64,000 bases of DNA from Podarcis filfolensis. Taxonomy: Eukaryota. The notes under the pieces were generated by a model, which was given only the letters and a program-made list of their open reading frames with translations, was not told where the DNA came from and searched no databases. Positions within the stretch are counted from its first letter, which is position 1. Each line of letters begins with the position of its first letter. The stretch lies in NCBI GenBank assembly GCA_964270895.1, contig OZ185440.1. The stretch is one strand, 5' to 3'. Position numbers and translations under genes: made by a program. Shown here piece by piece: positions 9,846 through 60,757 of this stretch.

Positions 9846-9854
9846 GTATCCTTT
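9846..9854 (+). promoter_or_regulatory. U12-type 5' splice site
   Basis: GTATCCTTT, an exact match to the minor-intron donor consensus RTATCCTTT. Confidence 0.92.
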
Positions 9855-11237
9855 GTGATGCTTTAGTTTTTGTTTTCGCTCTACCACGACCTGGGAATCT
9901 AAGGTAAGCAAAGACTTGGAATAACAGCAGCTCAAAAAAATACATTCTTTGCTCAAGCACACTGTTATATCATCTTTTCAAGGTTTCTCAGAAGTTTCTG
10001 TTAGGATATGGCTTGGATCCTGAAGTAATTTAGTATCAGAAAATTCATGGGAGGAACGTTTCCCATCCCCTCGTTCCCCTTCAGCATTTGTGTCACATTT
10101 GCCAAAGTATCTGGGAATAATGTGGGATGGGACACGAGGGAGCTGTTGGGTGAGAAGAGAACCAGGCTAAATTGGGTAGCTTTCTGCCTGATCTGGGGTG
10201 AACCCCCCATTTCCCCATCAGTCTTTTGTTCCCCATCACATGCTGTTCTGAGGGCCCTTCTATACTCTTGAGGTTTTATGAGGGGTGCAGGTGGCTGCAG
10301 GATGGAGGAGGCGATAGCAAGTTTTCCTTCCAAGAACTTCTTCAAGTAAAATAACCATAGAATCAAAGACTATGTCTATATACCTGTCTTCTCCCCCCTC
10401 TTTTAGGGCTGTATATTGTATAACCTCATTAATGTGCACCTTTTCTGTTTATTCATACTATTCTATAATATTCTAAAGGTTTGCCAGAAGTTTCTATTAG
10501 CTTTTATATCCAGTGGCAAGTGTTAAATTTGTTCTGTCGTCAACCTCTTCTGATTTCTGGTCTAAGCTGTCAAAAGCAATTTTAGCCCCTGTGAGAAAAT
10601 GCCAGTCACTATTCAAAAAAGACTGTGCTGTCCTTGATTATGCATTCCCTCCGTGATTTACATCTCCCACTTCCTCAGCTCCCTGCTAAAAGTCATCCTT
10701 CCTTTTTATTTCCCTTTTTGGGGAATGGGGCTCTTTATATCTCTGCAGGATCAACTTGTCTTATGCAGATGGAGCTATATCACTCTTGCTTCATACATCA
10801 TTGCCATCAGCCAGCCAGAGCAGAAAATAAGTTGTAGATAGCAGTGATTATCTTTGGTGATGAGGTACAGAAAAGCTGAGACTGCAGTTTGATTTCCATA
10901 AGCATGGCTGACCCTGCTGTGCTAAAAGTAGCACAAGCTGGTTTGAACAGGCAAACATGGAAAATGTTAGCATAACCTGTGTATTAATGTGGAAAATCTT
11001 ACCCTGCTTGGATGTAACTTCCTCTCCTTCCTCCTTTGCTGATGTTAGATCTCTCAAAGAAGAGATGCCCTACCTTTCCCTGAATTCCATTGCACTCATT
11101 CCCTGCCACCTTCTGATGTTACATTTCACTTTCTGTGACCCTGGCCAAGAATGATTGTGGTTGGGAAGTTAGGAGGGCTAGCAAGCTTCTTGAAAATCAT
11201 CACTGCAGAAGCTAAATTAATTGGCACAAGAATGATT

Positions 11238-11279
11238 AATTGAATACTATTTCATTATAATTGAATACTGTTTCATTAT
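11238..11279. repeat. 21-bp tandem duplication
   Basis: aattgaatactatttcattat / aattgaatactgtttcattat, 1 mismatch. Confidence 0.9.
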
Positions 11280-11955
11280 AAATTCCACGATCCTTTAGAG
11301 TGCCCAAGCTTGGATATAAAGAAATTTGTTGAAGATTATGTTGTGGAGCTATTGAGGCATGTTAGGAAAGCATAAAAAGCCAGCCTTATCATGGGAATGG
11401 GGATAAGAGTTCCTGTCTCAGCCAGGGATTGTACTCAAAACACCAGCTTTTTATCTAAGAAATCACTCTTGTCAAATCATCCTAATTTACCAGAGAGACT
11501 TGGTGATTGTGATTTCTAGTTAGCTGCATTTCTTAAGTAGAAGACAAAGCAGAGTTCTTTAATGTATTGTGCGGAGCACTGTTTTTCTAATTTATAAATG
11601 ATCAAGCTTAAGAAGACAACACGTCAGCGCTGAAAATCACCCTCTTTAATGTCAAGATGTGTCCTGGTAACCGACGTATTTGCAGCTAAAATGAAACCAT
11701 GCTAGTTAGGTTGCAGCAGCTCTTTATGGGCATGTTTGCAAATTGGTAATTAAATAACATGGTTGAGGTTTTTTTTAATGACCTTGGAGTTCATTAATGA
11801 CTGCAGGGAAAACATTTTTTTCTACTGAACTGTGTTGAGATGAACCCTTCTGTAGCTAATTGTACTTTTTAAGAGGAGAATTTAAAAGTGTAATTTGATT
11901 ATGTTAATTCAAACAATATGTTAATTTTATTTATATGGCCCACAGTGAAATCTGT

Positions 11956-12087
11956 GGATTGGATCCAGAACAAGTTGGTAGCACTTAGGTTCGATTGAAA
12001 GTAGTATGAAATATTAGTTACGACTAATGGATGTCCAATTAATTTCAATAGGACCTAAGCTGGTCAAACTTGGGCTGGATCCAACCC
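11956..12087. mobile_element. Palindromic MITE-like element (about 130 bp)
   Basis: Terminal IR ggattggatccag / ctggatccaaccc (12/13) and inner IR ttaggttcgattgaaa / tttcaataggacctaa. Confidence 0.65.
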
Positions 12088-12151
12088 AATAGAATGTATT
12101 CTACTGAAGATGTTGGAAGAGGAAGAAGTAACCATTTCTGGTAGCAGTGAA

Positions 12152-12285
12152 CAGGGATAGCCAATGTGTTACCCTCCATGTGTTGTTGGACTAGAATTCC
12201 CATCAGCCCCAGCATCTCCAATTATTAGGAATGATGGGAGTTGTAGTCCAGCAATATCTGGAAAGTACCACAGTGACTACACATG
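12152..12285. mobile_element. Short palindromic hAT-like MITE (family A)
   Basis: gttggactagaattcccatca ... tgatgggagttgtagtccagca internal inverted repeat; starts CAGGG. Confidence 0.65.
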
Positions 12286-12667
12286 GGCTACAAATAGGAC
12301 CACAACATTTATTAAGGCTGTGGTGTACATTTCTGCTTTTCACCATTGAGGCTGAAAATAGCTTTCCTCTGTCTGAAACTGTTTCAGCGTATTTTTTTTC
12401 CTATTTAGGGTTTTCCTCACTTTCTTAAGAGAGATCTATCAGTCAAAAGTCATGTAGTAAGTTTGATGACATCCAGGTGCAATGTAGCCAATCAGATTTG
12501 ACTGTGTGATGACATCACTTAAAGGAAACAAAGCCAACTGATAGGGCTTGCTGCATTAGTTATGTGAATAATTCCAATCAGTTGTATCATTCATTGCCCT
12601 CACTCTGTATGGGCAAGCATTTTTACACTCCCTTTTATGTTGTCCTCTCAAAGTGCTAAAAGGGTAG

Positions 12668-13112
12668 TGTTATGTTTCCAAGGGGTTGCTCGAGAGCAAG
12701 CAGGCAAATATCTCCCTGCTTGGCTGTGAAGCCTTGTTTTGCTGCCAAAATAAACCTTATCTGTCCGGAGCCCCACTCTCCCGTGGCTGGCTCAATCGCT
12801 GGCAGAATCCGTGAGTGGGCGGTTCCTAAACTTTCCCCAGCAAAGCAGCCCAGTCTGCGCCTCCCCTCTCTGCGCGGATACTTTCTGCGCAAGGAGGGCG
12901 TGGGTAGCGGAGGACCCCTCTCCTCCCTGCTTTTCCCAGGCAAGGAGTCCTGGGACCGCCTCGCCACTTCCAACTCCTGCAGCTCCTGTCCACTGGAGGC
13001 CTGTTTACTCTCCTCCGTTGAAGAGGAGATGCTTCCCCCGATCCCTGGAGGCTCTCTATAATCCATTCGGCTTTTGCTCTCTCCCTCCTGAGCTGACGGC
13101 AGTTCCCTGACA
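12668..13112. mobile_element. Solo LTR (probably Gypsy/Ty3 class), 445 bp
   Basis: Begins TGTTATG and ends CCTGACA (TG...CA). Exact 5-bp TSD GGTAG at 12663-12667 and 13113-13117. GC- and CpG-rich relative to its flanks. Confidence 0.85.
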
Positions 13113-14489
13113 GGTAGCTTTTGATGCTGCTGGAAATGTTGCAAAAATGCCTCACCTCTGATGCATGTGTAACCCTTGTGCCACCCATGTGATATGCTCA
13201 TAAATTTCAATGGGGTTTCACTAGTGTCAGGGTGGAAGTTCAGGTTGGGGGTTTTGGGTGGGGGGGGGAGGAGGAGAGGAATCCGCATGCAAAACAGGAG
13301 CTGAAAATGTCTCCTATGCTTTACATTTCAATAAGAGCACAGAATAAATCAACTCTGTGCGCCCCCCCCCAGTTCACTTCTTTCAACTTCTTAGTTTGGT
13401 TATTTAAACAGAAATGGACAGTGGTTATGATTTATGGTGTTTGTTCAGAGAAACAAAAAAATTACAAGGAGAAAAGTGTTTAAATGGGAAACATATTTAA
13501 ATGGGAGCACCACAATTTCTTTTCTTTTCCTTCTTTAAGCTTGTCCTTATTCTTTTCTCTTACATATAAGCAAATTGGAAGGAAGTGAAGCAGATGGAAC
13601 TGATAGCTAAACTCTTGGCTGTTCAGAGAACCATAAAAATGCTATTAAACCTATAGTTGAAATAATTCTTTGGTAAATGTTAAATTCCTATTAGTTATAC
13701 TTGCAAAACTTAGGTGCAACAGAAAGGGCAATACTAAGCTGAAAGGCAGTGGAGGCAATGAAGGGCTTAAAAACTATGAACAGTCTACAAAAATTATCTG
13801 AAGAGAGTAAAGTTGATAGCAACAATGTCAGATTGGAGATTTAGTTTGGCAACTGACTTGGTACCTGTGTGTGTGTATGTATCTGTCTGAAGTACAAATA
13901 AGACGGGGCAATGAACACTTCGAATGACCCCCGGGGCATAGATTAATTACAAAAATCTGTGTATCACTGGATTTTTTTTTTGAGCTGTTCTGCCATGTTT
14001 CATGTTTGTCAGTGTAGCTTCTAAAAGAAAGCATTAATACAACGTGTGTGCGCGCGTGGGTGTATGGACTGCTCAGATTAAATGATAATATAGGTACAAA
14101 CAGATGCATGTATGGTGCATATTGCTAAATTTAAAATAAGATTTCTTTCTATTACCTGAATAGAAATTCTGAGAATGTCTTCTCTAGAGCTGCCATGTTG
14201 CTAGTCTTCAAACTGAATGCATTTTTAACTTCACACCCCACCTTGATGTCGAATCTTATGTGTGCGTATGGCACAATGAATGTGCTAAACATGTTGGATC
14301 TCATCCATTTGCTTCCTCCTTGGTTGGTCTTGCCTCTACAAAATTGACCTAACATCCACACATCCCTGATCTTTCCCACCCAATTGTGTGGGATAACTAT
14401 TGCATATTATTGGGCTAGACTTTATGGGTTGAATCCAACTAAGTCATGCTCAGAGCAAACCCACTGAAATAAATGAAAGCAACTAGTTT

Positions 14490-14789
14490 AAATTCCTTCC
14501 AGTAGCACCTTAGAGACCAACTAAGTTAGTTATTGGTTACAGAAAGGTAGCCGTGTTGGTCTGCCATAGTCAAAACAAAAAAAAATTTTTTCTTTCCAGT
14601 AGCACCTTAAAGACCAACTAAGTTAGTTATTGGTATGAGCTTTTGTGTGCATGCATAGGTATCTGAAGAAGTGTGTATGTACACGAAAGCTCATACCAAT
14701 AACTAACTTAGTTGGTCTCTAAGGTGCTATTGGAAGGAATTTTTTTATTTTGTTTCGACTACAGCAGACCAACACGCCTACCTACCTGT
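14490..14789. mobile_element. Penelope-like element pseudo-LTR fragments in tandem and inverted arrangement
   Basis: ccagtagcaccttagagaccaactaag occurs twice directly and once inverted. Arms of about 14537-14655 and 14676-14792 are reverse complements. Flanked by AACTAGTTT at 14481-14489 and 14790-14798. Contains a hammerhead motif. Confidence 0.8.
14658..14697 (+). ncRNA. Minimal type I hammerhead ribozyme motif (Penelope-associated)
   Basis: GGTAT-CTGAAGA-A-GTGTG TATG TACAC-GAA-AGCT-C-ATACC: stem I GGUAU/AUACC, CUGANGA and GAAA cores, stem II, and palindromic AGCU helix III. Confidence 0.7.
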
Positions 14790-14984
14790 AACTAGTTTTA
14801 AGCTCATTACAGTGATTTTAGTGGTTCTATTCTAACACTGCTGGGTACAGCCCTGTATACACACATGTACCACTTACAGATTATGCAGAGCAAGGCAGAA
14901 GCTGACCATGTTCCTGATTTTACAGTCTTCTGTTTGAAAGGCTATCGGAAGACAGCCCTCTGTTTGAAGATGTGTCCAGAAGAG

Positions 14985-15095
14985 TAGTATTCAACTAAGA
15001 CCGCTCAGAGATGACTCACTGAAATTAATGACCCTAAGTTAGTCAAGCCTGTTCCCTTCAGTGAGTCTACTCTGAGTTGGACTAGCATTGGATGT
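14985..15095. mobile_element. Palindromic MITE-like element
   Basis: ctcagagatgactcactgaa / ttcagtgagtctactctgag inverted repeat. Confidence 0.55.
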
Positions 15096-15743
15096 GGTGA
15101 TGCATATCCTCCTTTTCAGCAATATGTGAAGGCAGGTTTCTGCTGTTCCACCACGCACTGGCATACCCTGTTCCCTTGCCTTCTCCATTAGCAACATTTG
15201 TTTTAACTCAGAACTCAGCTCCCTGGCCCCTGCCTCCCCCCAAGTTCTTTTTCTTCACATTCCAATGTGCTTGGTATCAAGAGGTAGATTATTTTTTTTA
15301 AAGTGTGCTCCTTTATAATGAGAAAATGAAATGCTAGTTGCATATCTTCTGCCAGTTCTCTTCTGGAAAAAAGTAAGTGTCAGCAGGAATCTAGTTATCA
15401 ATTAATTGCAGCAAAAGCAAATGCTACAGTACACTAGTAGCTTCCACATGCACCATTTGCCAAGTTTATAATAGTATCAGCCTAGCAAGCCATTAGTAAG
15501 ATCCTGGTCCTCGGTACCATCTGAGAAATACTGCTTTATCGCCACACTAAAACAAAAGCCATTTTCAATTATTGCACACATACTTCCTCACTCCATATAA
15601 GTTCCTGTTTGCCTGCAATAAGCTTACAAGTTCACTGTACTGTATTGTGCTTCTAGACTTCTTGCAGGAATGTCTCTGGGAAATTCCTTTTCTAGCCAGA
15701 GATTCAATGGGGCTCTTTACAATAGCAGTGGAGCTTCTACGTT

Positions 15744-15895
15744 TCATAGAATTGTAGAGTTGGAAGGGACCCTGAGGATCAGCTGGTCCAACCCCTGACA
15801 ATATAGGAATTGAAACTAAATCATACATGATAGATGACCATCCAACCTCTACTTAAAAATGTCCAAGGAAGGAGAGTCCACACAGTACTCCTGGT
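15744..15895 (-). mobile_element. CR1 LINE 3' end
   Basis: catagaattgtagagttggaagggaccctgagg... is the reverse complement of the CR1 tail (...ttccaactctacaattctatg). Confidence 0.75.
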
Positions 15896-15915
15896 GTGGT
15901 CTGACCAAGGCACAA

Positions 15916-15948
<33 letters not shown>

Positions 15949-15950
15949 GT
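15916..15950. repeat. (TG)n microsatellite, one interruption
   Basis: Direct reading. Confidence 0.95.
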
Positions 15951-16329
15951 AATACAGTCATCAGACCCTATCTGATATATCCCAATGCCACAAATGGTAT
16001 ACAGGGAAGCCAGAGAGATTGTTTTGATGGGCAATGCAAGGAGGCAAAGAAAGACCTTTTAAGAGTTATTAGGATTAGATTATTATTTTTGGAGGGGGGG
16101 CTCTGTAATTAATAAGGGGGATATGAGTAGGATTAGAGTAACATATAAGAAAATCCTTAAGAATAAAATAGCGAATTTTGTAAAATAGCGAATGTTGTGA
16201 GATGACAGTGGCAAGAACTAGGGCTGGCGGTGTCTCAGCAAAGGGGAGATAAATTCTGGGACCTGGCAGCTTGGAGCATGAACAAAACAAGATCAACATT
16301 AGATGCCACCATATTGGTGCAAAGCTGGA

Positions 16330-16575
16330 ATATAATAATTAATAATTATTAATTATAAGAATTTGCACCTTGCACATCTGACTGGATTGACCCAGCTTCC
16401 AGCATATATAAATCATAATAAATCCTTAAACCTTAAATGCTTCCCTATACAGGGTTGCCTTCAGATGTTTCCTAAATGTTACATAATTACTCATCTCCTT
16501 AATATCGGATGAGAGGGCATTCCGCAGGGTGGGCGTCACTACCAAGAAGGCCCTCTGCCTGATTCCCTGTAGTAC
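16330..16575 (-). mobile_element. L2 LINE 3' end
   Basis: gagggcattccgcagggtgggcgtcactaccaagaagggccctctgcc plus cttccctatacagggttgccttcagatg and an AT-rich tail match lacertid L2 3' ends (recalled). Confidence 0.65.
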
Positions 16576-17253
16576 TAGTAATAATAAGGGCAACCAGCAA
16601 CTGCCAAAGTGACCACTGATTGGTCAAAACTACTGGAATGGTAGTATCCCCTAGGGCATCCCCTACAGAAATAAAATCTCTCATAGACTACTACATCTCA
16701 CCTTTTTGAATGCTTGGTAATCTGCTCTAGGAAGGCATCATATTATTTATGCCATTCAAATTCCAGAGACCATGGGAAGCCTGCATGCCTATTTTGTATT
16801 TATGTCACAAGAGAATGCAGCCAATATTGATTTAATTTAGCAATAATACTCTCATTTTTTGCTTTTGCCTTTGTACTCTCTAGAGACTTTAATTAATGAC
16901 AATGCACAGCATCCTGCTAGGTACGGATTTTTTCTCCCTGCCCTACATTTTAAAAAAGTGACTGGAGAAGCGAAGAAACAAATTGAATCCACCTTTAGTA
17001 TAGCAAACAAAGTTCCAGTGAATTCAGCAAATCTGGCACACTTTCCTGTTGCTGAACAGCCCTAAGACCTTCGTTACAGGCATCTTTGTTTCTGTGTTAA
17101 ATGTAGTTTGTTTTTTACTTTGGCTGCCATGTACAAAATGGCATGATTTGTCCTAAGGGTAGAATCTAGCCCTCCTCATAAACAATGAACACCCACTCTT
17201 CAAATCTTATTTAAGCAGTTTCTAAGATAGCACTGGTCACCACCACTACTACT

Positions 17254-17391
17254 CAAAAGCTATTTTTTCTAGAAAAAGAGGTGCCAGAACTCACCACAAA
17301 CACCTCCCTTGTTCTCTTACAATGGCAATGGCACCCACCTGAGAGGTGCTGAAACTGAGTTCCAGTGAGTTCCAGCTGAAAAAAAGCCCTG
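17254..17391. mobile_element. hAT-like MITE
   Basis: Ends gctattttttctag ... ctgaaaaaaagccctg with internal gagttccag repeats; a common lacertid MITE (recalled). Confidence 0.6.
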
Positions 17392-18160
17392 GCAGTGACA
17401 GATCTTGGATTTGGGTGTGTGTGTGGAAATGAATGCCCATTGTTTAGAATTCCCTGGTCCTTGTATCTGGGACATTGTTGTGGCAGCATCCTCAGGCATA
17501 ATTAGGAGAACAGTACCAGCCCTTCTCAAGAGTTCCCCGTGTGGTGGTAGTGCTGCTGCCAAATATGTTTTGGGAACAGGAAAGAGGCTGTGTGTGTGTT
17601 GTCTTACAAGCACAGTCTCATTCCTGTTGATGTCTGCAGGACCATGTTGAAGCTTAAAATTTGGAATGGACTTAGAAATGAGCTCTTTTTCCAAGAGGTG
17701 TTTTTTTTAACACTGTTACTTTAGATGACCCCATTCTGTATTGCAACTGCGGCGTCAGCTATCCATATTCATTTGTGTTGCTGCTGCTTTTATATTAACA
17801 AATTCTGTGCTATTTCTCAGCTCACTTTACCAATAATTTAAGTGGAACTGTCTTCCGGGGTTGATCATTTCTTCACATGTAAGAGATCTCCACACTAGCA
17901 CTACTTTATTCCATCGCTTGCCAGGTGTCCTGCATATGTCCACAGAGTTAAAATGGACATGTGCAGGATATATGGCAAGAAATGACTCAGGCCAATGGAA
18001 TATGCTTGTGTGGGACCCTACCATTTTAAAAGATCAAGGAGACAGCCACCTATGTGATGAGTGCATGATCTAAGATTAACAGTAGGCCTTATGTGGGTGC
18101 AGGAAGCAAACAACCGAGAACACTGGAGAGGTGTATATCCAAAGATGGATGTGAGATGCT

Positions 18161-18181
18161 GAAGAAGAAGAAGAAGAAGAA
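18161..18181. repeat. (GAA)7 microsatellite
   Basis: Direct reading. Confidence 0.9.
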
Positions 18182-19066
18182 GTGCAGGATCTGTCTATCA
18201 TTGCTCCATCTCATACTTGTCACCAACCAGAACTCATGGTATCATTGTGATTGTATATTTTTCTGACTTGCGCCTTAATCCCCTGGACACGAGATTTAGA
18301 AGCTGACCCAGAGAACAGGCAGCAGTAAAGTGCCTAAATCCCCATGGAGATACAACTAGATCTCTCAGGCTCCTTAGAAATCCTTGCATTTCAGCAGAAT
18401 AACAAATCCTAGACTAACTACAGTTCTTGCTTTTCTTCTCCTTCACATACAATCCACTCTGCCATACTTAAGCAAGTCAGCAAAGAAACAGTTGTGGATA
18501 CACTTCCCCACAAAGTTAACTACTAACTACTACCTATAACTAGCATATATGTTTCTCCGTTCAAAGTGACTCAGTACTTCTCAGCTGGGCATGGCTAGTT
18601 CTCGCTTTATGATTTCCACCCCTCATCATGGGTAAGCCAGCGCCATCCAGAGGCAATAGGGAAGGGCACAGGAAATTGCTAGTGAACCCAGATGTGCATC
18701 CTCACCCACTTGCCCTCTTATGCCAAGGGTAAGACCTTAAACCCAGCTCGATGTGTCACCTTAGCAGGAGCCCTGCTCAGAACTCCTTGCCACTGACCAG
18801 TGGCTCCACAAACCAGGAACGCAGCGCTCATAACGCTCCGTTCTTGGCCCTTGCCCTTAAGTTATTGGTTTAAGAAAGGCTAGACAAACAGTGTGCTAAA
18901 ATCCTTTTCTGAGACATACAGCTTATTTCTGAGCTCGCCATCCTGGAATGACATTAGTTAAGTTGTGGCACAGGTGTGTGTGGTCGACACATCTACATTT
19001 ACAGGAGCAAAGACATAATGGTTCAGCTATTGTCCGAAGCAACTTCTGCAGTATGCAGCTACTAGA

Positions 19067-20158
19067 GATGAATGAATGAATGAATGAATGAATCTTTATT
19101 TGCATCAGCCACTGGCCATAGCAATAAAAAAAACAATATGATATACAAAGAATAAAGATAAAAAGTCAATTATATAAAATACATTTTTGGGTTTTGAATC
19201 AATAGTCAAATAGTGGATCTTATTCTAATTGCCCCGGCTAAAAACCTTGCAATCTTTGCTGTCACCTGCTCATCTTGATCTGCCAAAAGAAAGGACACTG
19301 TGACAGTGGCTGGGTGACCCGGAATGGACAATAAAAGAGGTGTGATAACATTCCTCAAGTCTTTATAAAGAGTGCAAGCCAGAAGGGCATGCGCCACCAA
19401 GTCGAAATGGGTAGGTGGAAAATAGTCGTACCATGGGCAAAATTTCCTTATTATGGCCAAGTTGTTCTCTCGCTTGATATCATTTAGGCGCTTACTAATT
19501 AGACTGTTTGCTTTACTAAAACCCTGTGTGAGTAGCTGTTGTGGTGATAAACCACAAGAGTGAAGTTTTCAATAGACAATTTTGGTCTAGGCGCTTTTGT
19601 GACAATCTTGCGGCACTAGGGGTATTAGACCAGGGGGATTTCAGTTTAGGCGAAGCCAATAGTTAAGTGTCCTATGCCATACCCGTAATTCTACCAAGGG
19701 AAGATTAGCCTCTAGGTGCAATGAGTTGGTACAGAGAAAATTTGCCTTAAGAACTTTGATTGGACAGCTTCCGTAGATCCAAGCTGAGTGCCTCTCCAGA
19801 TCTGAGCCCCATATAATAACTGTCCTAGGGGTTTAGCTTGGAACACTTCTAGGACTGATAGTGTATGTTTACCACCTTTTGTATAGAAAAAGCGTGTCAG
19901 AATTTTGGCGCTTTGGGATGCTTTTTCTTTTGAACATTTCTGGTGTGCTCCCCATGACCCTGTAGACTGGAAAATAAGGCCAAGAAATTTGACCTGTTCA
20001 ATTAGCTGGTTGTCCATGCACCATCTATGGGCTCTATAGTTTCTTGAGAAAACCATGACTTTGGTTTTCTTGTAATTCACGGCCAGCTGTTCTCTCTGGC
20101 AATATCCTGAAAATTCAGTCTTTTTAGGCCTACTTTTGTTGGGATAGAAGAATGGAAT
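19067..20158 (-). mobile_element. Non-LTR retrotransposon 3' fragment (RTE-X-like), frameshifted
   Basis: Minus ORFs 19712-20080 (NYKKTKVMVF...IEQVKFLG...LLYGAQIW...EAVQSKFLR) and 19206-19460 (H.LL.C..Y..LR...). AATAAA followed by an (ATTC)n tail. 8-bp TSD CTACTAGA at 19059-19066 and 20159-20166. The family assignment is less certain than the LINE call. Confidence 0.8.
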
Positions 20159-49717: not shown

Positions 49718-49732
49718 CTACTACTACTACTG

Positions 49733-49763: not shown

Positions 49764-50347
49764 CTGACACACCCTCCATTGTTACTTTTAATACATATTA
49801 TAAAATGTCTGAAAGGCTAATTCACCAGTTCAGGATTTGAGCAATGGCTACACAGATTTATCTCAGCAATTTAAATAAGATTCTAGGCAAACCCCTGTAA
49901 ATAAAACCCATGGGTCAGAGACCAGGGACAGGTTCAGCGTTTAGAGATTTTCTTCTTTTATATTTGGTTCTAGCTTGAAGAACCCCACCCCCCACCCAAA
50001 AAAACAACAACCACACACACCTGGAACCCCAATCTGGATGTCTGGATAGCTGCTTCTGCAACCTCTCACACGCACCTGAGAGATGGCCAAACAACCATAT
50101 TTTTAAAAGGTTCTTTAAAAACCCAGCAGTATTAGCAGCCAGAAGACTGTAGATACATAGATATTCTGAACTTCAAAACTTCCCATTTCCTCCCAAGGTC
50201 TAAATGCACAGTTGAAAGTCTGTTTCCTTTCGCCCGTCTCATGGAGTTGGAGTCCCTTGCTTGCTCTGCCAATATGCAAAAATTGAGAGTGTAGAATGGG
50301 GGTAGGTGGGAATCAAGAGCATTGGAAAATGGAAACATTTGGAGCGC

Positions 50348-50379
50348 TGCAATCGATCCTGGTCCAGCAGGTGGCAGCA
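50348..50379 (+). promoter_or_regulatory. CTCF motif with upstream module
   Basis: CCAGCAGGTGGCAG (50364-50377) is an exact match to CCASYAGRKGGCRS, with TGCAAT at 50348-50353. Confidence 0.6.
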
Positions 50380-50821
50380 GAAGGCTCTAATAATTCCTCC
50401 AAAAAAAATTTAGAAACTTGCAGTTCCTGATTTTGCCAATAGAAAATTGAGAAAATGAATCCAGCTGCTAGGATATCTCAACACTTCCCTTCCGGCCTGA
50501 GTAGAGTCTTGGATTTCAGTGTATGTGATTCCCAAAGGAGAACTATTAATCATGTGACTATTCATCACGTTAATGGGAAATTGTGACCAGTGGAAGCCAG
50601 TCCCCCTTCTTAAGACAGAGTTTAACTTGGACCTATGGCAAACTAAGCTCCATTTCTTATGCACCTGTTGAAGGGAGCCAAACATAAATTTATCTAGATA
50701 AGTTTCCACCTTCTTCATGCTTCTGAACCAAACATTTCAGAGGATCAAGCTGGGAAAGTGGACTGGAGACAAAGCAATGGATTTTCATTCCCCAGCAGGA
50801 GTTCAGAGCCCCAGAAACGCT

Positions 50822-50957
50822 TAGCCTCTTTCAACCTTGGTTCCCTATATGTTGTTGGACTGCAACTCCCATCACCCTGGAACACTGGTCCTACTAGCCA
50901 AGGATGATGGGAGTTGTATTACAACAATAGCTGGGGACCCATGGTTGAAAAAGGCTG
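50822..50957. mobile_element. Short palindromic MITE (family A)
   Basis: Terminal IR agcctctttcaacc / ggttgaaaaaggct (13/14) and inner IR caactcccatca / tgatgggagttg. Confidence 0.75.
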
Positions 50958-52558
50958 TTCTAAATGGTGCTGTTTGTCCTGCAGGGATTATACTCTCTGT
51001 ATTAACTCCCTGTACATAGAGCAATGAAAGATGCTCACCTGTCAGCAGCACCCCCCCCCCATACACACACACCTTAGAAAAGTCAACCCAGAATTCCCAT
51101 TAAATCTCCCTATAGTCGTGGCCCAGCAAAAGCTCCCTGTTTCCTGACACTGAGCAACTTAGTGACCTGGAATGTCTGCCTGATATCTTGCTAGACTTTC
51201 TACCGCATCTATCATATCATATCATATGGTTTATTTATTTTATGCATTGTACCTCACTCTGGTATCTGTACAGGTGATGGGCAGTATATTTATATTTTTA
51301 AGACAATTGTGTGGGCTTTGTCCTACTTGCCACGTCTATAATTCTGCATCAGCTGCAGGAGGGCAAACTGACTCTCTCACTCTGGCTTTTATTCCTCTCC
51401 CATTCCAGCTCAAAACAGTACTTTAGTTCAGCTTGCTTATGCTTCTTCCTTCCCCTTGATTGCTTTCTGCACTTTCTTTATTTGCCCATACTGGCTTGCT
51501 TTGCCGCAAAGTGTATTTATTGCTAGCTAGCACACATAAATGCTCAGACATACATTCAATTACCTTTGAACAATTTCCATTTACTTTCTATTTTTTGCTT
51601 TCCCCCTGTTCAATTTCACCAAGCTCCTGCATTCTCCTGAGTGTGTTCAACTGACATGCACTCTTCTTCTAGTTCTTCTTTAATTAAGGACTTGCACTAA
51701 ATTCTCATCAGTGGGATTCAGTGGCTATCTTGTTTATACATCTTGGGCTGGGAATGTAAGCTTACCCCCCAAAACAGAGCAAGCGGTGCTGGTGTTTTGT
51801 TTTGGTTTTTTCCATCTACCATTGCAAATTATGCATAAAATCACTTTCCTGCCATGCATCTTCAGAATTGTTTTTGTCCAGACATGATTTCTAGTAGTAG
51901 GGTCTAGGAAACACACTATTTTGGCAATGTTTTCTGGCCCATGTATTTGCTCCAGCACTCCTTTCCTTCTTCACCCATTCAGTCTAGGCCTAGACCTCAA
52001 AATATCCTTGCCGGTGGATATGACAACACTGTTTTGATCTTGACTGTATCTGAACTCTGTCCATAGTCACATCTTCCTTAAGGCAGATGATGGCCCAGGA
52101 ATTCCTCGGGAGACTTGACACAATTTGAGAGGAGCAAGAGGATTCCTGGAGAGAATGAACTATAAAAATATTACTGGCCAGGAAATTATAACGACTTGGG
52201 GTGGGGGAGACAGGATTTAACAACTGCTTAGGAAGTCTATCAGGTTATGACAGGGGTGGGAATATAAGGGGTGGGGCTGAATCAGAACATCGGTTTGTTT
52301 AGCTTATTCTGAGTGAGGGCATGACAACTTGCACAACTTGTGATCTACCAAACTGAACGCAGCTGATCTGCAATGTACTTTAGTCTGCATTTGGTGACAG
52401 TTAGTACTGATACCTCACAACGGATTACTGTGCTGTTTATTTTTGTTGTTTGATACTATTTTATTTAACTCGTTGATTTTAATAAGATTTTGTATAGTTT
52501 TAATACACTGGAAACCATTTTGGTATTTTCCTATAAATGAAAAGTGGTGTGGTAGGTA

Positions 52559-53100
52559 CCGTATTTTTCGCCCTATAAGACGCACTTTTTCCCCTCCAAA
52601 AATGAAGGGGAAATGTGTGTGCGTCCTATGGGGCGAATGCAGGCTTTTGCTGAAGCCTGGAGAGCCCCAGCGCCAGCCCCAGCCCCACAAGGTCGGGGGA
52701 CAGCGGGGAGGCAGAACGCCGCCATCCCGCTGTCTCCCGATGTGGTTTGGAGGCTGACGGCGGGGAGACGCGTGCTTCTCCTCGCCGCCAGCCCTGCAAG
52801 CTCCAGGGACAGCAGGGAGGCGCAGCGCGTCTTCCCGCCGTCCCCGGACCTGGTCTGCAGGCGGGCGGCGGGGAGAAGAACGCTTCTCCCCGCTGCCGGC
52901 CCCGCAAGCTCCGGGGACAGCTGGGAGGCGCAGCATGTCTTCCCGCTGTCCCGGGACCTGGTCTGAAGGCTGGCGGCGGGGAGAAGAGCGCCAGCCCCAC
53001 AAGCGCCTGGGGGGGAAATAATTTTTTTTCCCTTTATTTCCCCCCCAAAAAACTTGGTGCGTCCTATGGGCCGGTGCGTCCTATGGGGCGAAAAATATGG
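52559..53100. mobile_element. Tc2/pogo-like MITE, 542 bp, with an internal tandem array of about 108-bp GC-rich units
   Basis: 27-bp TIRs CCGTATTTTTCGCCCTATAAGACGCAC / GTGCGTCCTATGGGGCGAAAAATATGG (3 mismatches), TA TSD on both sides. gggacagc recurs at 52697, 52806 and 52914. Confidence 0.9.
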
Positions 53101-54293
53101 TATACATTCTCTCTCTCTCTCTCTCGTTATAGTCTGCCTCTCAAACCCATGCTCCATCTTTCCTTGTTAATGGGCACAATCAGAACTACAATTGTGCTTG
53201 GTCAATATGTAGTTCCTCAGATTGCTTACTTGGCAGGTGCCCAGGATCTAAGCAGGGAATGGAAGCTGAGGCTGGGGAAATCTATGGGCCTTGAGGGATT
53301 GGAGCTGACAGTGTTACTTCTTCTCCTCCAGTCAATTATTTTCCTCCAGCCCCTTCTAATACCCCATTTTTATAATAAATTATGGATTACTTACATAAAA
53401 GCTTTTTAGAAAAAAACAGTGCTGTTGTACCAGGATTTTATCGTATAAAATTCTAATCTGCCATAACTCCTGGGGCAAGCATCCCTCAGCAGGTTCTTTC
53501 TCTCTTCTTAGCAACGCAATGCATTTAGGGTTGGGGGAACCAACACACTTGAGGACAAAAACAACACCTAGAACCCATTGGTAGAGATGGTTACAGTGCT
53601 TTAACATTTGCAGCTGGATCTTAATCAAAACTAAATCATGCTGCAGTCTTATATACCAATACCTGTATGATCTATGAGGTGCATGGGTATCTTCAGGAAT
53701 TTTTCCAGGGGTGAGCAAAGTGAAAACCTGGGGGGGGGGTTCCCCAGGGATGCACAGGGTAGTTTTCATGGCCAGGAAGCTTCAGTCCCAGAAGCCAAAT
53801 GTGCCCCTTCAGGCCTCTACTTTTGCCTTTGGCTCCACTCACCATTGGCATTCAGGTCCCATAAACTTGCCCATACGAAAATGTGGCCCTCAGACCCTCA
53901 GACCCCCTTGGTTTAATCCTCTGACTTTTTCATTATTGCCTCTTCCTCATTTTGCTCGTCTCCTCTTTCCCCAATAACTCTACTCTGACTAACCTTGCAG
54001 ATCACCCCATGTAATTTCTCCATTTGCCCTTTGCCCATTCTAGTTTGAATATCATGAATACTGCTGTCTATTCCCCTCTTCACCTTTAAAGGTGTCTAGA
54101 GTAATGTTTTAACCTACTGCAGTCCTGATAAGCACCTAATAATTTTGTTCGGGACTATAAAATAGGTTTTGCCAAGTTCCCATTTGCTTCTTAATTCATT
54201 GGAACTGTGTTGAGTAGAACTTTCAGCTGAATTCCAGCTTTCTATTGCATACAGAAGCACTACATTTATGGAAGTGATTGAGATGCAATATCA

Positions 54294-54294
54294 G

Positions 54295-54329
<35 letters not shown>
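54294..54329. repeat. (GTT)12 microsatellite
   Basis: Direct reading. Confidence 0.97.
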
Positions 54330-54330
<1 letters not shown>

Positions 54331-55709
54331 TAAAAAAATCTGAACAGGCACTATTACTGAGAGGCCTGAATGCAACTAATGTTCCTAAAAAATGCTGAAC
54401 TCCCTCAGATAAAAGATGCAGCACCTTAAATTAGGCTGAAAAATCCTGACCTCTGCAAACCTTGTTTTCATCCCCCTCATCACATACATTGATGCTATAT
54501 GAATAATATCACTAGATCTCATTCAGATGCAACGTATGGTGCTGTGGACTGAAACAGCTCTCTGATTGTAATTAATCCCCAGAACAATTCCTTGCTCCCA
54601 ATAAATATTAGCAGACATCAGAGATAACTGAGGAGGAGAGATAACATGAATGTTGTGAAGGAGAGAACAGTAATGCTGGTAGGTTCTCCCCCATTTTAAT
54701 TTTGACCTTCCCTTGAAAAATAAAGTTTCCTTAGTCCCCCTTCCCTTTGGCCCCTATTTGCAGCCAGAGAATTACCAGAGCTTCTGCCTCTTTGAGTTAT
54801 TTTCTTCTCACTGATAAAACCTTAAATCTTTTTAAAAGACTGCTTGTTTTAATTGCAAAATTTCAATCAATCTACAACCCCCCCATCCTAAATAGCCCCA
54901 CATGCAGTAAATAATCTGTAGTGAGGCTTTCTGCAGTAAAGAAATAAATAATTCTGAATCTGCTGTATCCTACTTGATCTCCAAGCTTTAAATCACTGTG
55001 GTTTGCACTGAGCTCAGCCAAAATACTAAACACACTGGAGCATGACTATTACTTAGGGACTGCAAGTCTTTTTTTAAAGGTACAGCATCAGAGGCTGTCA
55101 ACCTTTCCCCCAGGGGAGCTCTATCATGATAGAGCCTGCTGGTTCTGTGCAAGCAAATTGGCTTCCATGCCACTTCATCTGCTCTTAACGTTAGGGGTGA
55201 AGAAAATGCTTTAGACATAAGAACAGGTGGGCTGTAGAGCAAATACCTCAGGGAAGTTGCAGAACAGCCTTCCCAAAAGGTCTCCAAGAAGAGAATGGAT
55301 GGCTGTTAATCAGGTATTGTACAGTATAAGGCTGGGATTCCTGATTTGGCAGGGGGTCAAACGGGATAAGTTATGGGAGCCCTTCCCTTGTTGTGATTGC
55401 ATGACAGCAATATCCAACATCCAACGAGAAGACTGAAAACCTTTCTACTTAATTCAGCCCAGGTCCTCGGACATCAGATTTCCTTACTCTTTTCCAGTAA
55501 ATCTGATCCATTTCAATTTGGCGTGCCAAGTAGCGTTTATAAGGTAATTCCTCTCGTTTCTTTGTGATGCATTGTACCAGGCAAGACATTTGAACATTGC
55601 CCTTGCTTTGCATGGAATGTTCGTATTTGTTTCTTCTGTGTTCAGAGGCCGCACCCAAACTGACATGTGCAATATGAGTTCTGCTTAAGGTAATATCAAA
55701 GTCCCGCAT

Positions 55710-55904
55710 CCTGCCAGTGCAAGGATTTCCACATGCGCATTAGGGCTCCCCCTCCCCCAATGCATGTGACCTGCATTCTCTCTATATCTGTTCTGGAGCA
55801 CTGGAGAAAACCCCATAATAGATTTAGGGGATGGATGGGGAGAGGAGACGGAATGGGGAGGGGGGGAGTCCCCTAGTGCAAGTGGAAATCCTTGCGCTGA
55901 CAGG
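55710..55904. mobile_element. Palindromic MITE-like element (195 bp)
   Basis: cctgccagtgcaaggatttccac / gtggaaatccttgcgctgacagg (21/23 complementary), with the similarity continuing inward. Confidence 0.7.
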
Positions 55905-58900
55905 AGGCTTACTTAACGCCTCACTGGATACGAGCTTAATTATGCCATTCCCATGATATCCGCTGCACGTGTTGGACCAGATTACCACTGACCAGGTTGT
56001 GGTAGGTAATTTTAGTCGCTTAGTGGACATGCTCATCTGAAAGTAAATCCTATTAAATTCAATGAGACGGTCTTCTAAACAGGTACAGTATGTATAGGAA
56101 TGTGCTGTAAAGGGATCCATTTCTAATTCAGCTTGTAGACAGGTAGTTGGAAAGCAGCCTGTGCCATCATCTTGACAGAACGTAATTTTTGAAGTACAAT
56201 TTATAACGCTTTAAAATACGTTGTGGGAACAGCTTATATTCTTTTAGAAAGAATCTGTATTAAATCACTGGGCAGTGAATTGTATCTCCTTTCACATAGA
56301 TATAGAGCTATTGATGCTGGCAGTGCTTTCTCTGAGGGGTACTCAAAGGTACACAGTACTGGCACCTTCATACCCCCCTCCCATGTTAAAAGTGTGTCAC
56401 TTCCTGTAACAACTTCATGGTGAGTGCTGGCACCTTTTTTCTAAAAAAGAAAAAGAGAGAAAGCACTTGATGTTGCTGGGTTTTCTCTGCTCGCTAATGT
56501 ATATGCTGAGAAGAAGTGGTGGATTGCACCACTGCAGACTACTGGTGCAGGACCACATGTTTGAGTTCAGCCCACTATTGAAAACAAACAAGCTATATCC
56601 GGACGCTTCTGTCGTTGTCCATATCAGTTGCAAATTTCCTTTCTTTAAAGGGTCATTGTGAAAATCCATTAGCATTTATGTAATGCATTGATGTTGTCTT
56701 CACAAATCTATGCCTTTTGATGCACACTTTACTCAAATAGACGCATTTTTGGTATACATTGTCTGGAGAACTGCATTGCAAAATTCAGAGAAGTGCAAAT
56801 AGCTGTCCTCCAGTTCACTTTTTGCTTCAGGCAGAGCAAATTACGGTAGGCAGGTTCACCTTCAAATGTGAACTTAACCAATTTTGTCCCCCATCCCTAC
56901 AAACAACTATCTGCAAAGAGAAAATTAGCACTACACAGAGAAGGCTAAGCTCATTCACAACATGCAGCTTTTCTACATGCAAGTATGTTGGGAGGTATTT
57001 ATATATACATTCTCATGATTCTTTTAAACATGCAACTCAGCTCAAAATCTCATATGGAGTGTCCAACCTGCAACCACTACAACAGACTTATGGTAACTGT
57101 TAATTACCATGTCTATTATTCTGTTTTTTAAAATCCATGTACATAGTAAACAAGCACATCAGGAAGTTGACTAGCTTGGACCATTCTCTTTGATATTCTA
57201 ATTTTCTACATGCATTCCCAAGTGTAGGTGACCATTAAAGGGGGGGGGGGGATTGCATTTTGAAGCTGACAAAATATTCAGCCAGATAGTGGGGAGAATT
57301 GTTTGGTTTGCTAGATGGGGTGTGTGAGAGGAGAGGATGATTTATAATGCTCATTTAGTGCAACTGTGATGAAAGAGACGTACATGACAGAGTTTCAACT
57401 CAGGAAAAGCTTCCATAGTCTTGAACATCAGTACCCACACACCTAAGGACCTATTTCTTAATGAAACTGACAAAAATATATTCCTAGGCCATAGTTACAT
57501 GAAAGAAAGGAAATTCTCTTCTTGATAAACGCCGCAATTTCTGTAATGGAAAACTGACTTTCTAGCAAAGTTGGCATACTCAGCAGAGCTGTATCCTGTT
57601 GTCGGCTTCTTACTCTGTATGCATCTCCCTCCCTCTTCCTCCTCTTTTTTCATAATTTAACTGCTTGCATAAAACAAAGAAGCACACAGGTCTGTCAAAT
57701 GATACCTCCAGTCTAGAAGGTCATAGTTCTTAATCCTCTTAGGGGGATAGACTTGGATGAGTTCCATAACTAATAACCCAGCCAATAGCATTTCAGGCTG
57801 ATGGAGGTGCTGTCCTCTAGAAGAGACATAAAAGTTAAGATCCAATCCGTTTGATGGAGACCCCCAAAGGACTTATCAAATATTGAACGGCGCTGCTAAC
57901 TGGCTTTGCCCTTGTCAAATCCTTATCGCAGCAGAAGCCTCACTCACTGTGGCATAGAAATGACACAACAGATCTTATTAAAATGAGATTGTGGCTTTGA
58001 AAGGAGTCTTATTATTTCCAATAATTGCCACTGCTTTGCAAAACGGGGGGGGGGGGGTGGAAAGTCAACCCACAATCTTGAAAGCAAAATGACCCCACAT
58101 TTTAAGAAGTAAAACAAGCGCAAGGATGGATCATAGTGCGACTGGTCTCTGCAGTGGCAACATTATTAAATGATCAGTGAGCTATTAAAGCTACAGTGCT
58201 TAGTATCTCCCCTAAAGACTCATAGCGCTAACAGGTTTCCAAATTGAGGTTTTTATTGCTGGAAGAAGGCTCTGTGTGCAGTTCTTGAAGCTGCGATTAC
58301 AGGGAATGGTTGTGAGCAGACTGACACTAAACAGGAGCAACAAATCTTCTTGAGTGAAAACTGGCAATGGATGACTCCCCAAAGTGTTTCAATATGACAG
58401 CAAAGAGGACTATAGAAGTGGAAAGGATACTGCATAATAAGAAACTGAAACTAATCAGAAATATGGTGTTTTACTTGGATTTAAATAAAGAGCAAGGTTT
58501 TACGCGCCTTTATCTGACCAGTTGGGATGGGTAAAAATGGGTAATTGATAGCGTTGCAGGAAATTTCACCCACCATTAACTTCAAATGGTATCCTTTCCT
58601 AGGGGGCTAAGGTTTCTTATATTCCTTCCAAAGGTATTGAAATGTAGCCACTAGCAGAGGAGAAACTGCTGCCACTTCTGTTTTTCCAAGAGCAGGTCTT
58701 TCACCATGTCATTTGGGCCAGAAAAGAGGAAGGAATACTAATCCAATAGCCATCACAAGGATGGTAATGACAGCAGGAACCAATGTTCTGGGGAACACCT
58801 CTGGAAAATTGAAATCCAGGGAAGCAGCCATTGTTAGTTCCACTGGGTCAAGTAAGTTTCCCCCCCCCCCTCTCTCCTGTGGCATAATTTTATAGATTGC

Positions 58901-59504
58901 AAATGCAGGATAGTGTAAGAGGAAAAACTGAAAATAAAAGTCACGCAAAAGAAAGAAAAAGGAACCAGTTGAAGACATTGCTGCGATTATAGTGGACAAA
59001 GAGTCCCTGTACAGTGGATTTTAAGAACCAGCCCGCCTTTTTCAGCACCCTTATTTCATTTGTTACCAGCTCAACTGATTAGAGGACAGAGACATGTGGA
59101 GCGCATCTGAAGTTGAGATAAGAGAATCATTACAATAGTAAAGGTGCAAAGCCTTTATCTCCTTTGCATGTGAGAGATGCAATTGTCTGCAAAAAGTGAC
59201 TGAGAAACATCCCAAGATCAAGCTTTTTCAGACTACCAATGCAGCTTTCTGCAGGAGATCTATGAAGTACTAAATACCTGGAGCCAATGATAGATGAAAC
59301 AATTGACATCTCATATGCACCTACATCAAATGTAGTTAAGCTGAAATCCGGAGAAAGAATAAATGAAACAGGTGCTGCACAGTGTATCTGCAGGACTTTA
59401 GAAAAGGTTTTGGTCACTGAGACTTGTGCTACATTAAGAAGCAGAGTAATAATAATAATAAATACCTTCTGAATGATATCATGAATGTTTTCTTTTGTTT
59501 TTAA

Positions 59505-59582
59505 AAACTTTCCCATCAGCCCCAGCAAGCATATTCAAGGATGATGGAAAATCTGGAGGGCCACAGGTTCTCTACCCCTGCC
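59505..59582. mobile_element. Partial MITE (family A)
   Basis: ttcccatcagccccagca...atctggagggccacaggttctctacccctg. Confidence 0.55.
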
Positions 59583-60733
59583 TAGATCTTGGGTTAGGTC
59601 CCTCATGACAAACAGTGGTTGGTTCTGAGCTGACATCAAACATTACTTGAAGTGATTAGTGTCCTTGTTTTAAATGAAAGCTCAGTTATTTCCAAAAGTG
59701 TGAAGTCTTGTTCTTACAGATTTCCATGATGTGATTCCCCCACCTACAGTCAGAAGTGGTACAATCCAGACTCAGGTTTACCCTCCTCATGAGAAATAGC
59801 TTGATTCAAGGTGAAACCCGGCACATTCGTGCTAATAAAAGTTGGTTCTGAATATATATATATATATAAATGTATTTCTACTACTTTGTCTCCCTTTGCC
59901 CCAGTTGAATAATAATCCTGCATGGGCTTCAGGGTCATTTCTACAATTAGACTGTAGCTCATTTACAAACCTCTTGGATTAGTTTCTCTGTATAATACTT
60001 CCAGCTTTCAGCCACAGAGCTAAGACTTTACATGATTTCACATTAGTCATCTTCTCCATTTGAAGAAAAAATAATGAGCAGAGATATTTCCCCCCACAGA
60101 GTGTGAACTCTGCATCTTAAATTCATTTGTTTTGATATCCCTAATGTGAGTAGGCGGGTAATAACAAATGCTTCATTTAGAAGTTGGCATCTTTACATAA
60201 GATGCCTGGAAACCCTGAAATGTTATACTTCTGGAATTTCCCACTACTGGAAATTGCATCAGGTAATTACTGATAACTGCATTTGTACAAGACACAAATA
60301 GATTTAAGTTTCAGAATGGACGAAAAGCTAATAATATAATGTATGTGTGCATAAAATGGAAGTGCATACAAAATCATGGACAATCATTGGTGTTTGCTGA
60401 AGGGACAGGGTGCTTGGTTCAGTAGGTTATGTAAAGGTGATACATAATCAAGCTGTACATAACATTCCCTTTCAGGAGTTGAGAATCCTCTTTAGAGTAG
60501 CCAAGTCACATGAGTGTGCGTGAGGTAATTCAAGTGGGAGCATACGTTACAATTTTAGCAACATATTATTGTTTGGTTTGAACAAAAGTGATACCCAGTT
60601 ATGACACTTGTAAATCTGTTAATAAATATTAAGGTCAGATCTATTGGAGTATTAAACTCAAATTTGCTTATGCATCGTATCTCTGTAATTTACCTTTGCA
60701 GCTGGTTTGGATTTTAAAAACCCCTTTTAAGCA

Positions 60734-60744
60734 TTCTCCTTAAT
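60734..60744 (+). promoter_or_regulatory. U12-type branch site
   Basis: TTCTCCTTAAT versus consensus TTCCTTAAC/T; the presumptive branch A60743 is 14 nt from the intron end. Confidence 0.85.
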
Positions 60745-60757
60745 TAGACACTCACAG

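What the first reader, a model, noticed from the sequence alone, without database searches (positions are those of the whole stretch)
9846..60757. A 50.9-kb minor-spliceosome (U12-type) intron directly after the catalytic-Glu exon of AGBL4/CCP6
Seen: donor T|GTATCCTTT, branch site TTCTCCTTAAT with A at -14, CAG|AT acceptor without a pyrimidine tract, and an in-frame junction restoring ...PYTEET-Y-MKLGRN. Established: these are the defining U11/U12 recognition signals; minor introns are rare and are often rate-limiting for expression. Inference: U11/U12 must bridge about 51 kb full of TE-derived U2 sites, so production of full-length tubulin deglutamylase may depend on minor-spliceosome activity. 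I cannot tell from here whether the orthologous intron is already catalogued.
Basis: partly seen in the sequence, partly recalled or inferred. Interest (0 to 1): 0.75.

Follow-up and report, generated by a model that had tools for sequence, protein, structure and literature searches.

The report
Known minor-spliceosome intron in lizard-type AGBL4
The 50.9-kb gap between two coding exons of the tubulin deglutamylase gene AGBL4/CCP6 is a genuine U12-type (minor-spliceosome) intron, but it is the orthologue of one already catalogued in human and mouse, so it is real and ordinary.

Summary
These are donor T|GTATCCTTT at 9846, branch-site box TTCTCCTTAAT at 60734-60744, a CAG acceptor ending at 60757 with no pyrimidine tract behind it, and a phase-1 junction that rebuilds a Tyr codon (…PYTEET-Y-MKLGRN…).

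- **Chance:** both signals falling at the two homology-defined exon borders is expected about 5e-8 times by chance.
- **Gene identity:** the exons match AGBL4/CCP6 orthologues. The closest are a lizard and a snake at 96% identity.
- **Already catalogued:** the MIDB tables of Olthof et al. 2019 list this intron in human (47,265 nt) and mouse (39,043 nt), with near-identical donor and branch boxes.
- **Conservation:** the same U12 signals sit in the same Tyr codon in a fish (8.4-kb intron) and in amphioxus (about 400 nt). Of 145 related gene models, 52 read through the donor as "CIL" (TGT ATC CTN).
- **RNA evidence:** partial. One run's contigs cover only the exon. They are spliced at its 5' border and stop within 4 nt of the donor.
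- **Not tested:** dependence on minor snRNPs, and any rate-limiting role.

Verdict: a correct call on an already known feature, of low novelty.

The parts
9683..9845 (+). AGBL4/CCP6 coding exon A (163 nt). It starts in phase 0, ends after the first base of a Tyr codon, and contains the TLEVSF motif with the presumed general-base Glu.
   Evidence: Translation. 145 homologues with up to 100% identity, named AGBL4/CCP6. RNA-type contigs of run X1 cover 9683/9686-9849 only, and carry a spliced-on upstream exon tail before 9683.
9846..9854 (+). U12-type 5' splice site GTATCCTTT, with T at -1.
   Evidence: Identical GTATCC core at the same codon in 8 other loci. Human CCT|GTATCCTTA and mouse CCT|GTATCCTTG are listed in MIDB.
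9846..60757 (+). The intron, 50,912 nt. No Rfam family, no convincing coding exon, a few TE remnants.
   Evidence: The orthologous introns are 47,265 nt in human and 39,043 nt in mouse.
60734..60745 (+). U12-type branch-site box TTCTCCTTAATT. The candidate branch adenosines are 60742 and 60743, which lie 15 and 14 nt before the last intron base.
   Evidence: The human box is TGCTCCTTAATG and the mouse box TGCTTCTTAACA. The fish has CTCCTTGAC and amphioxus has TACCTTGAC at the same distance.
60755..60757 (+). 3' splice site CAG, with no pyrimidine tract between the branch box and the AG.
60758..60854 (+). AGBL4/CCP6 coding exon B (97 nt). It encodes (Y)MKLGRNVARTFLDYYRLNSITERPLAPISST and is followed by a U2-type donor GTAGGT at 60855.
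   Evidence: The lizard protein P0003 joins ...PYTEET directly to YMKLGRNVARTFLDYYRLNAITERPLAPISST.

Best explanation
Bases 9846-60757 are a U12-type (minor-spliceosome) GT-AG intron of the AGBL4/CCP6 gene of a squamate reptile. It is orthologous to the minor intron already catalogued in human and mouse AGBL4.

Proposed mechanism, from established knowledge of this intron class:
- U11 snRNA pairs with the donor GTATCCTTT.
- U12 snRNA pairs with the box TCCTTAAT and bulges one of the two adenosines.
- The U11/U12 di-snRNP recognises both ends together.
- The close spacing between box and AG, read by ZRSR2, replaces a pyrimidine tract.
- U4atac/U6atac.U5 then carry out catalysis.

Splicing joins T(9845) to AT(60758), which rebuilds a Tyr codon and continues the carboxypeptidase after its catalytic-Glu strand.

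If the intron is not removed, the frame reads CILCDALVFVFALPRPGNLR and then stops, which gives a C-terminally truncated protein.

Shown here: the signals, their position, their conservation and the gene identity. Inferred: the snRNP dependence.
For: **Signals.** They are present at the homology-defined exon borders. The joint chance expectation is about 5e-8.

**Catalogue.** MIDB lists AGBL4 with MIG status 'Both' in human and mouse, with 5'ss PWM scores of 98.7 and 96.5 and BPS scores of 76.2 and 81.4. The listed introns are 47,265 and 39,043 nt.

**Donor conservation in DNA.** The donor T|GTATCC is conserved in a 96%-identical relative, two fishes, a tunicate-like contig, amphioxus and three unnamed eukaryotic contigs.

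**Acceptor conservation.** The branch box plus AG lies at the same distance in Hypomesus and Branchiostoma, always splitting the same Tyr codon in phase 1.

**Gene models.** 52 of 145 homologous models continue ...PYTEEx-CIL, which is read-through of GTATCCTN. 20 or more are spliced to Y-MKLGRN.

**Poor fit to the major spliceosome.** The donor has T at -1 and TCC at +4 to +6, and no pyrimidine tract precedes the AG.

**RNA.** Contigs of run X1 cover only exon A, carry a spliced-on upstream exon, and stop at 9849 with one differing letter. That pattern fits ...T|ATATG of exon B.
Against: - No read or contig was seen to span 9845^60758 in this species. The three raw RNA runs laid gave zero reads.
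- The X1 contig gives only 5 letters beyond the donor, and the position of its one mismatch was not printed.
- No PWM program (intronIC) was run.
- Dependence on the minor spliceosome cannot be tested with these tools.
- The last base of the branch box is T rather than the commonest C. Human AGBL4 shares this.
Confidence: 0.93

Rival explanations
1. The junction is as described, but the major (U2-type) spliceosome removes the intron. The U12-like motifs would then be coincidental or vestigial.
For: The termini are GT-AG, which both spliceosomes accept. An unnamed invertebrate-type contig (L009) has a plain U2-type intron (T|GTAAGAGA ... TTTAG|AT) in the same Tyr codon, so the position itself tolerates a U2-type intron.
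Against: - The donor has almost no U1 complementarity: T at -1 and T, C, C at +4 to +6.
- There is no pyrimidine tract.
- The GTATCC core and the CCTT(A/G)A box have been kept from amphioxus to tetrapods, while the intron sequence beside them is not conserved.
- The human and mouse orthologues are classed as minor introns.
Confidence: 0.03
2. In this species the real transcript uses another acceptor, or carries an extra exon inside the 51 kb, so the 50.9-kb figure would describe two or more introns.
For: No spanning read was obtained. The intron also contains other U12-like donors (29215, 42065, 52002, 58589) and branch-like boxes (for example 29253) on the + strand.
Against: - All spliced orthologues, including a lizard at 96% identity, join ...PYTEEx directly to YMKLGRN with nothing between.
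- The human and mouse introns have the same single-intron structure and similar lengths.
- The five letters that the X1 contig carries past 9845 fit exon B's start.
- Any extra exon would have to be non-coding or alternative.
Confidence: 0.03

Closest known systems
Human AGBL4 minor intron (chr1:48539739-48587003, ENST00000371839) and mouse Agbl4 minor intron (chr4:111617283-111656325), as listed in MIDB by Olthof et al. 2019, BMC Genomics 20:686 (PMC6717393, Tables S1 and S2)
   Same: Same gene, same GT-AG U12 subtype, and same T at -1 before the donor. The donor GTATCCTT and the branch box CTCCTTAAT are identical to human. Length is of the same order: 47 kb and 39 kb against 50.9 kb. No exon lies between the two.
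   Different: Different species (a squamate). The codon before the junction is ACG (Thr) rather than GCC (Ala). The ninth donor base is T rather than A or G. These differences are not functionally meaningful.
U12-type GT-AG introns in general (U11/U12-dependent; consensus /RTATCCTTT and TTCCTTRAY 10-15 nt before the 3' splice site)
   Same: All sequence criteria are met: donor, branch box, short distance from box to AG, no pyrimidine tract, and phase 1, which is said to be common for this class (my own knowledge).
   Different: It is much longer than a typical minor intron. The branch box ends in T.
U2-type intron at the same codon in an unnamed invertebrate-type contig (L009)
   Same: Same intron position and phase in the CCP6-like gene.
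   Different: GTAAGA donor, no TCCTTRAY box, and only about 210 nt long. It looks like a U12-to-U2 conversion, which is a known evolutionary path.

Membership tests
U12-type (minor-spliceosome) intron, GT-AG subtype | 5' splice site matching /RTATCCTT(T) | tested here: met
   GTATCCTTT at 9846-9854 is a perfect match.
U12-type (minor-spliceosome) intron, GT-AG subtype | Branch-site box TTCCTTRAY close to the 3' splice site (about 8-21 nt) | tested here: met
   TCTCCTTAAT at 60735-60744. The adenosines lie 14 and 15 nt before the last intron base. It matches the box listed for human AGBL4.
U12-type (minor-spliceosome) intron, GT-AG subtype | No polypyrimidine tract between the branch site and the AG | tested here: met
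   The spacer is TAGACACTCACAG. The neighbouring U2-type acceptor of exon A has 90% pyrimidines.
U12-type (minor-spliceosome) intron, GT-AG subtype | Signals conserved at the orthologous position in other species | tested here: met
   Human and mouse. Fish, amphioxus, a tunicate-like contig and others. 52 gene models show the 'CIL' read-through.
U12-type (minor-spliceosome) intron, GT-AG subtype | The junction is actually used in RNA of this organism | tested here: inconclusive
   X1 contigs cover only the exon and end at 9849 with one differing letter, which is compatible with a join to ATATG. No spanning read was found, and three raw RNA runs gave 0 reads.
U12-type (minor-spliceosome) intron, GT-AG subtype | Splicing depends on U11/U12/U4atac/U6atac | not testable with these tools
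   This needs knockdown or mutant RNA-seq.
AGBL4 / CCP6 (M14D cytosolic carboxypeptidase, tubulin deglutamylase) | Sequence orthology to named AGBL4/CCP6 proteins | tested here: met
   Exon A is 96% identical to Phrynocephalus and Ophiophagus CCP6, and 81-94% identical to turtle, bird, frog, shark and fish proteins named AGBL4/CCP6, CCP6-like or left unnamed by their source.
AGBL4 / CCP6 (M14D cytosolic carboxypeptidase, tubulin deglutamylase) | Peptidase_M14 domain | tested here: met
   The two exons alone give no Pfam hit because they are too short. Full-length orthologues hit PF00246 and the solved CCP5 structures 8v3m and 8v3q.
AGBL4 / CCP6 (M14D cytosolic carboxypeptidase, tubulin deglutamylase) | The exon carries the general-base Glu (equivalent of CPA Glu270) | tested here: inconclusive
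   In orthologue P0018 the HxxE His, the third zinc His and the TLEVSF Glu are spaced by 98 and 73 residues. In the Burkholderia CCP structure paper His171, His268 and Glu344 are spaced by 97 and 76. The spacing fits, but no alignment or structure reached the motif.

The most novel reading that the evidence does not exclude
The unusually long (about 40-50 kb in amniotes) and very old U12 intron directly after the catalytic strand works as a regulated bottleneck. Under this reading, minor-spliceosome activity sets the level of full-length CCP6 in ciliated and testis cells. Retention or early termination would produce the CIL-tailed truncated protein as a regulated product rather than as noise.
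Probability: 0.08. Interest if true: 0.45.

Novelty: already known. Interest (0 to 1): 0.15.

Why it matters
AGBL4/CCP6 removes glutamate chains from tubulin and matters for cilia and centrioles. Because it contains a minor intron, its expression should fall in minor-spliceosome disorders, but that is already implied by its listing in MIDB.

The practical value here is for annotation.
- Gene predictors often fail at this intron. 52 of 145 related models run into it and end in 'CIL...'. The deposited amphioxus model skips the true donor.
- Orthologues in reptiles and many other animals are therefore likely to be truncated or mis-joined in databases.

The data also show that the intron predates vertebrates, and that at least one invertebrate-type lineage has replaced it with a U2-type intron.

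Tried and rejected
- **Pfam and PDB searches of the single exons:** no hits, because the exons are too short.
- **Paper search for AGBL4 with 'minor intron' or 'U12' in main texts:** nothing relevant. The listing is only in supplementary tables.
- **Supplements of the intronIC/IAOD paper and of the 2024 MIDB paper:** no AGBL4 in the one file held, or no files held. No supplements are held for PMC7507305.
- **Lizard genomic locus of P0003:** not fetchable, because the gene range exceeds 100 kb.
- **Ciona P0052 and P0012:** not on record.
- **Tunicate-like contig L003:** exon B was not found in it.
- **Word-index protein search with exon A:** no spliced fragment from the same species.
- **Raw RNA runs X21-X23:** zero reads on the stretch, so they are no test.
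- **Rfam scan of the window:** nothing, so no intron-hosted known RNA.
- **Upstream exon (…CQNAEDFSF):** not inside the window.
- **Earlier scan notes:** none near this place.
- **PWM from the MIDB 12-mers:** not built, because that would have meant typing many sequences.
- **Contig look-ups:** none were made for proteins of mammalian type, and no contig fetched looked human.
Full report
**Observation**

- A coding exon runs from 9683, after a pyrimidine-rich CAG acceptor, to 9845.
- The intron begins GTATCCTTT at 9846.
- The box TTCTCCTTAAT lies at 60734-60744.
- The intron ends CAG at 60757.
- The next exon starts AT ATG AAA CTA GGA AGG AAT at 60758 and ends before a U2-type donor GTAGGT at 60855.

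Exon A translates to SSTSFNRDAVKAGTGRRFLGGLLDDTSYCYTLEVSFYSYIVGGTTSTVPYTEET. Exon B translates to (Y)MKLGRNVARTFLDYYRLNSITERPLAPISST. The split codon T|AT gives Tyr. The intron is 50,912 nt.

The only correction concerns numbering. A60743 is 14 nt before the terminal G, which makes it position -15 if that G is -1.

**Chance**

From the window's base composition, RTATCCTT at one fixed position has P = 4.8e-5. TCCTTRAY in any of 12 allowed positions has P = 1e-3. The joint value is about 5e-8.

Empirically, RTATCCTT occurs 5 times and TCCTTAAY 3 times on the + strand of the 64 kb. The 13 nt between the box and the AG are not a pyrimidine tract. Exon A's own acceptor has 90% pyrimidines.

**Gene identity**

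The exons alone are too short for Pfam or PDB hits. I therefore ran exon A against the 1.84-billion-protein representative library, which returned 145 hits, 65 of them at E <= 1e-10.

Named members include:
- Phrynocephalus forsythii, a lizard, at 96% identity
- Ophiophagus hannah 'Cytosolic carboxypeptidase 6', at 96%
- Platysternon CCP6
- Pavo and Anas/Anser AGBL4
- Callorhinchus AGBL4
- Ascaphus CCP6-like
- several fishes
- Ciona CCP6-like
- Branchiostoma CCP6

Full-length orthologues carry Peptidase_M14 and match the solved CCP5 structures. The window is therefore AGBL4/CCP6 of a squamate.

The claim that the exon holds the catalytic Glu rests on the TLEVSF motif and on spacing.
- In orthologue P0018, the zinc His of HxxE, the third zinc His and the TLEVSF Glu are 98 and 73 residues apart.
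- The Burkholderia CCP structure paper gives His171, His268 and general-base Glu344, which are 97 and 76 apart (PMC3940198).

No alignment reached the motif, so this point is inference.

**Is it catalogued?**

Yes. The supplementary tables of Olthof et al. 2019 (PMC6717393; Table S1 'Minor intron coordinates ... as reported on MIDB' and Table S2 'MIG orthologs') list AGBL4 with MIG status 'Both'.

| | Human | Mouse |
|---|---|---|
| Coordinates | chr1:48539739-48587003 | chr4:111617283-111656325 |
| Length | 47,265 nt | 39,043 nt |
| 5'ss | CCT\|GTATCCTTA | CCT\|GTATCCTTG |
| 5'ss score | 98.7 | 96.5 |
| BPS | TGCTCCTTAATG | TGCTTCTTAACA |
| BPS score | 76.2 | 81.4 |

The window's TTCTCCTTAATT shares the core CTCCTTAAT with human. 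The same paper places Agbl4 in the mouse testis up-signature under the centriole and cilium terms. AGBL4 occurs only in the coordinate, orthologue, expression and functional-annotation tables, not in the remaining ones, which include the intron-retention and alternative-splicing tables.

**Conservation beyond mammals**

The protein hits themselves carry a signature of the donor. After ...PYTEEx, 52 of 145 models continue 'CIL', which is T|GT ATC CTN. Eight more continue 'CIx'. These are gene models that ran into the intron. Twenty or more are spliced to Y-MKLGRN-type sequence.

At the DNA level, the donor T|GTATCC was found at the same codon in these loci:
- a 96%-identical relative (L001)
- two fishes (L004, and L007 from Hypomesus)
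- a tunicate-like contig (L003)
- Branchiostoma belcheri (L008)
- three unnamed eukaryotic contigs (L002, L005, L006)

Two loci also hold the acceptor.
- Hypomesus has ...CCTCCTTGAC-14 nt-CAG|AT ATG AGG, with an intron of about 8.4 kb.
- Branchiostoma has ...TACCTTGAC-13 nt-CAG|AC ATG AAG, with an intron of about 400 nt.

The intron is therefore a U12-type intron that predates vertebrates, and it has grown roughly 100-fold in amniotes. The deposited amphioxus model (P0054) avoids the true donor and loses ...PYTEEAY. One unnamed invertebrate-type contig (L009) has a U2-type intron, T|GTAAGAGA ... TTTAG|AT, in the same Tyr codon. This looks like a U12-to-U2 conversion.

**RNA evidence in this organism**

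One search for runs was allowed and one laying of reads (on window 9300-10300). Three raw bulk RNA runs gave zero reads and so are no test.

The contigs of run X1 cover only 9683/9686-9849. Nothing lies on the flanking intron on either side. Before 9683 the contigs continue with letters that are not in the window and that translate ...CQNAEDFSF, which is the end of the upstream exon as seen in orthologues (alignment). So these are spliced transcripts, and exon A's 5' border is confirmed.

The 165-nt contig aligns to 9849 with one differing letter, and its last letter is unaligned. That is exactly what ...ACGT|ATATG (exon B) would give against ...ACGT|GTATC. The position of the mismatch was not printed, however, so the junction is only partly confirmed.

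**Mechanism**

From established knowledge of the class, which was not tested here:
- The U11/U12 di-snRNP binds the donor and the branch box cooperatively.
- ZRSR2 reads the nearby AG.
- U4atac/U6atac.U5 carry out catalysis.

Failure to splice gives CILCDALVFVFALPRPGNLR followed by a stop, read.

The intron holds only 2 AGGTRAGT matches, one Y10NCAGG match, one sub-threshold reverse-transcriptase remnant and no Rfam family.

- No contig look-up was made for proteins of mammalian type.
- No earlier scan note exists near here.

**Verdict**

The feature is the orthologue of a catalogued minor intron, so it is already known and of low interest. The side results are a deep-conservation record, a recurrent 'CIL' annotation artefact, and one case of a U2-type intron at the same position.

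Noticed in passing
Proteins P0001-P0145: 52 of 145 AGBL4/CCP6-like gene models in public collections end or continue with 'CIL...' right after ...PYTEEx. This is read-through of the U12 donor T|GTATCCTN. It is a recurrent annotation artefact that marks the minor intron at the protein level.
   Followed up: yes
L009:6259-6566 (unnamed eukaryotic contig from a bioreactor metagenome): The same Tyr-codon intron position carries a short U2-type intron (T|GTAAGAGA ... TTTAG|AT, about 210 nt) with no TCCTTRAY box. This is probably a U12-to-U2 conversion in some invertebrate lineage. Five other fragments (…PYTEELCKK…) suggest the same. The taxon is unknown.
   Followed up: partly
L008:22465-22960 (Branchiostoma belcheri, GCA_025402995.1): The deposited CCP6 model (P0054) reads ...SSVPTSTDMKLGRN and so skips ...PYTEEAY. 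The true U12 donor and acceptor lie about 400 nt apart. The model is mis-spliced around the minor intron.
   Followed up: partly
window:52501-53000 (tandem repeat at 52679-52991): A GC-rich (63%), CpG-rich (observed/expected 0.76) patch deep inside the intron. It contains a 108-bp unit repeated 2.9 times that is also partly self-complementary, and long ORFs overlap it on both strands with no Pfam family. It could be a CpG island, a TE fragment or a minisatellite.
   Followed up: partly
window:61001-62000 (tandem repeat at 61747-61841): A second CpG-rich patch (GC up to 62%, observed/expected 0.6-0.7) just downstream of exon B, with a 33-bp unit repeated 2.9 times at 98% identity. It is unexplained.
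   Followed up: no
window:43617-44234 (+): A 205-aa ORF with a weak RVT_1 match below the curated cut-off (E = 0.006). It is probably a decayed retroelement inside the intron.
   Followed up: no
P0059 and P0062 (ENA metagenome contigs of 7.7 and 39 kb): CCP6-like ORFs called as one uninterrupted frame across the junction (…PYTEEGYMKLGRN…, …PYAEDIYMRLGRS…). These organisms may lack the intron altogether. The contigs were not fetched.
   Followed up: no
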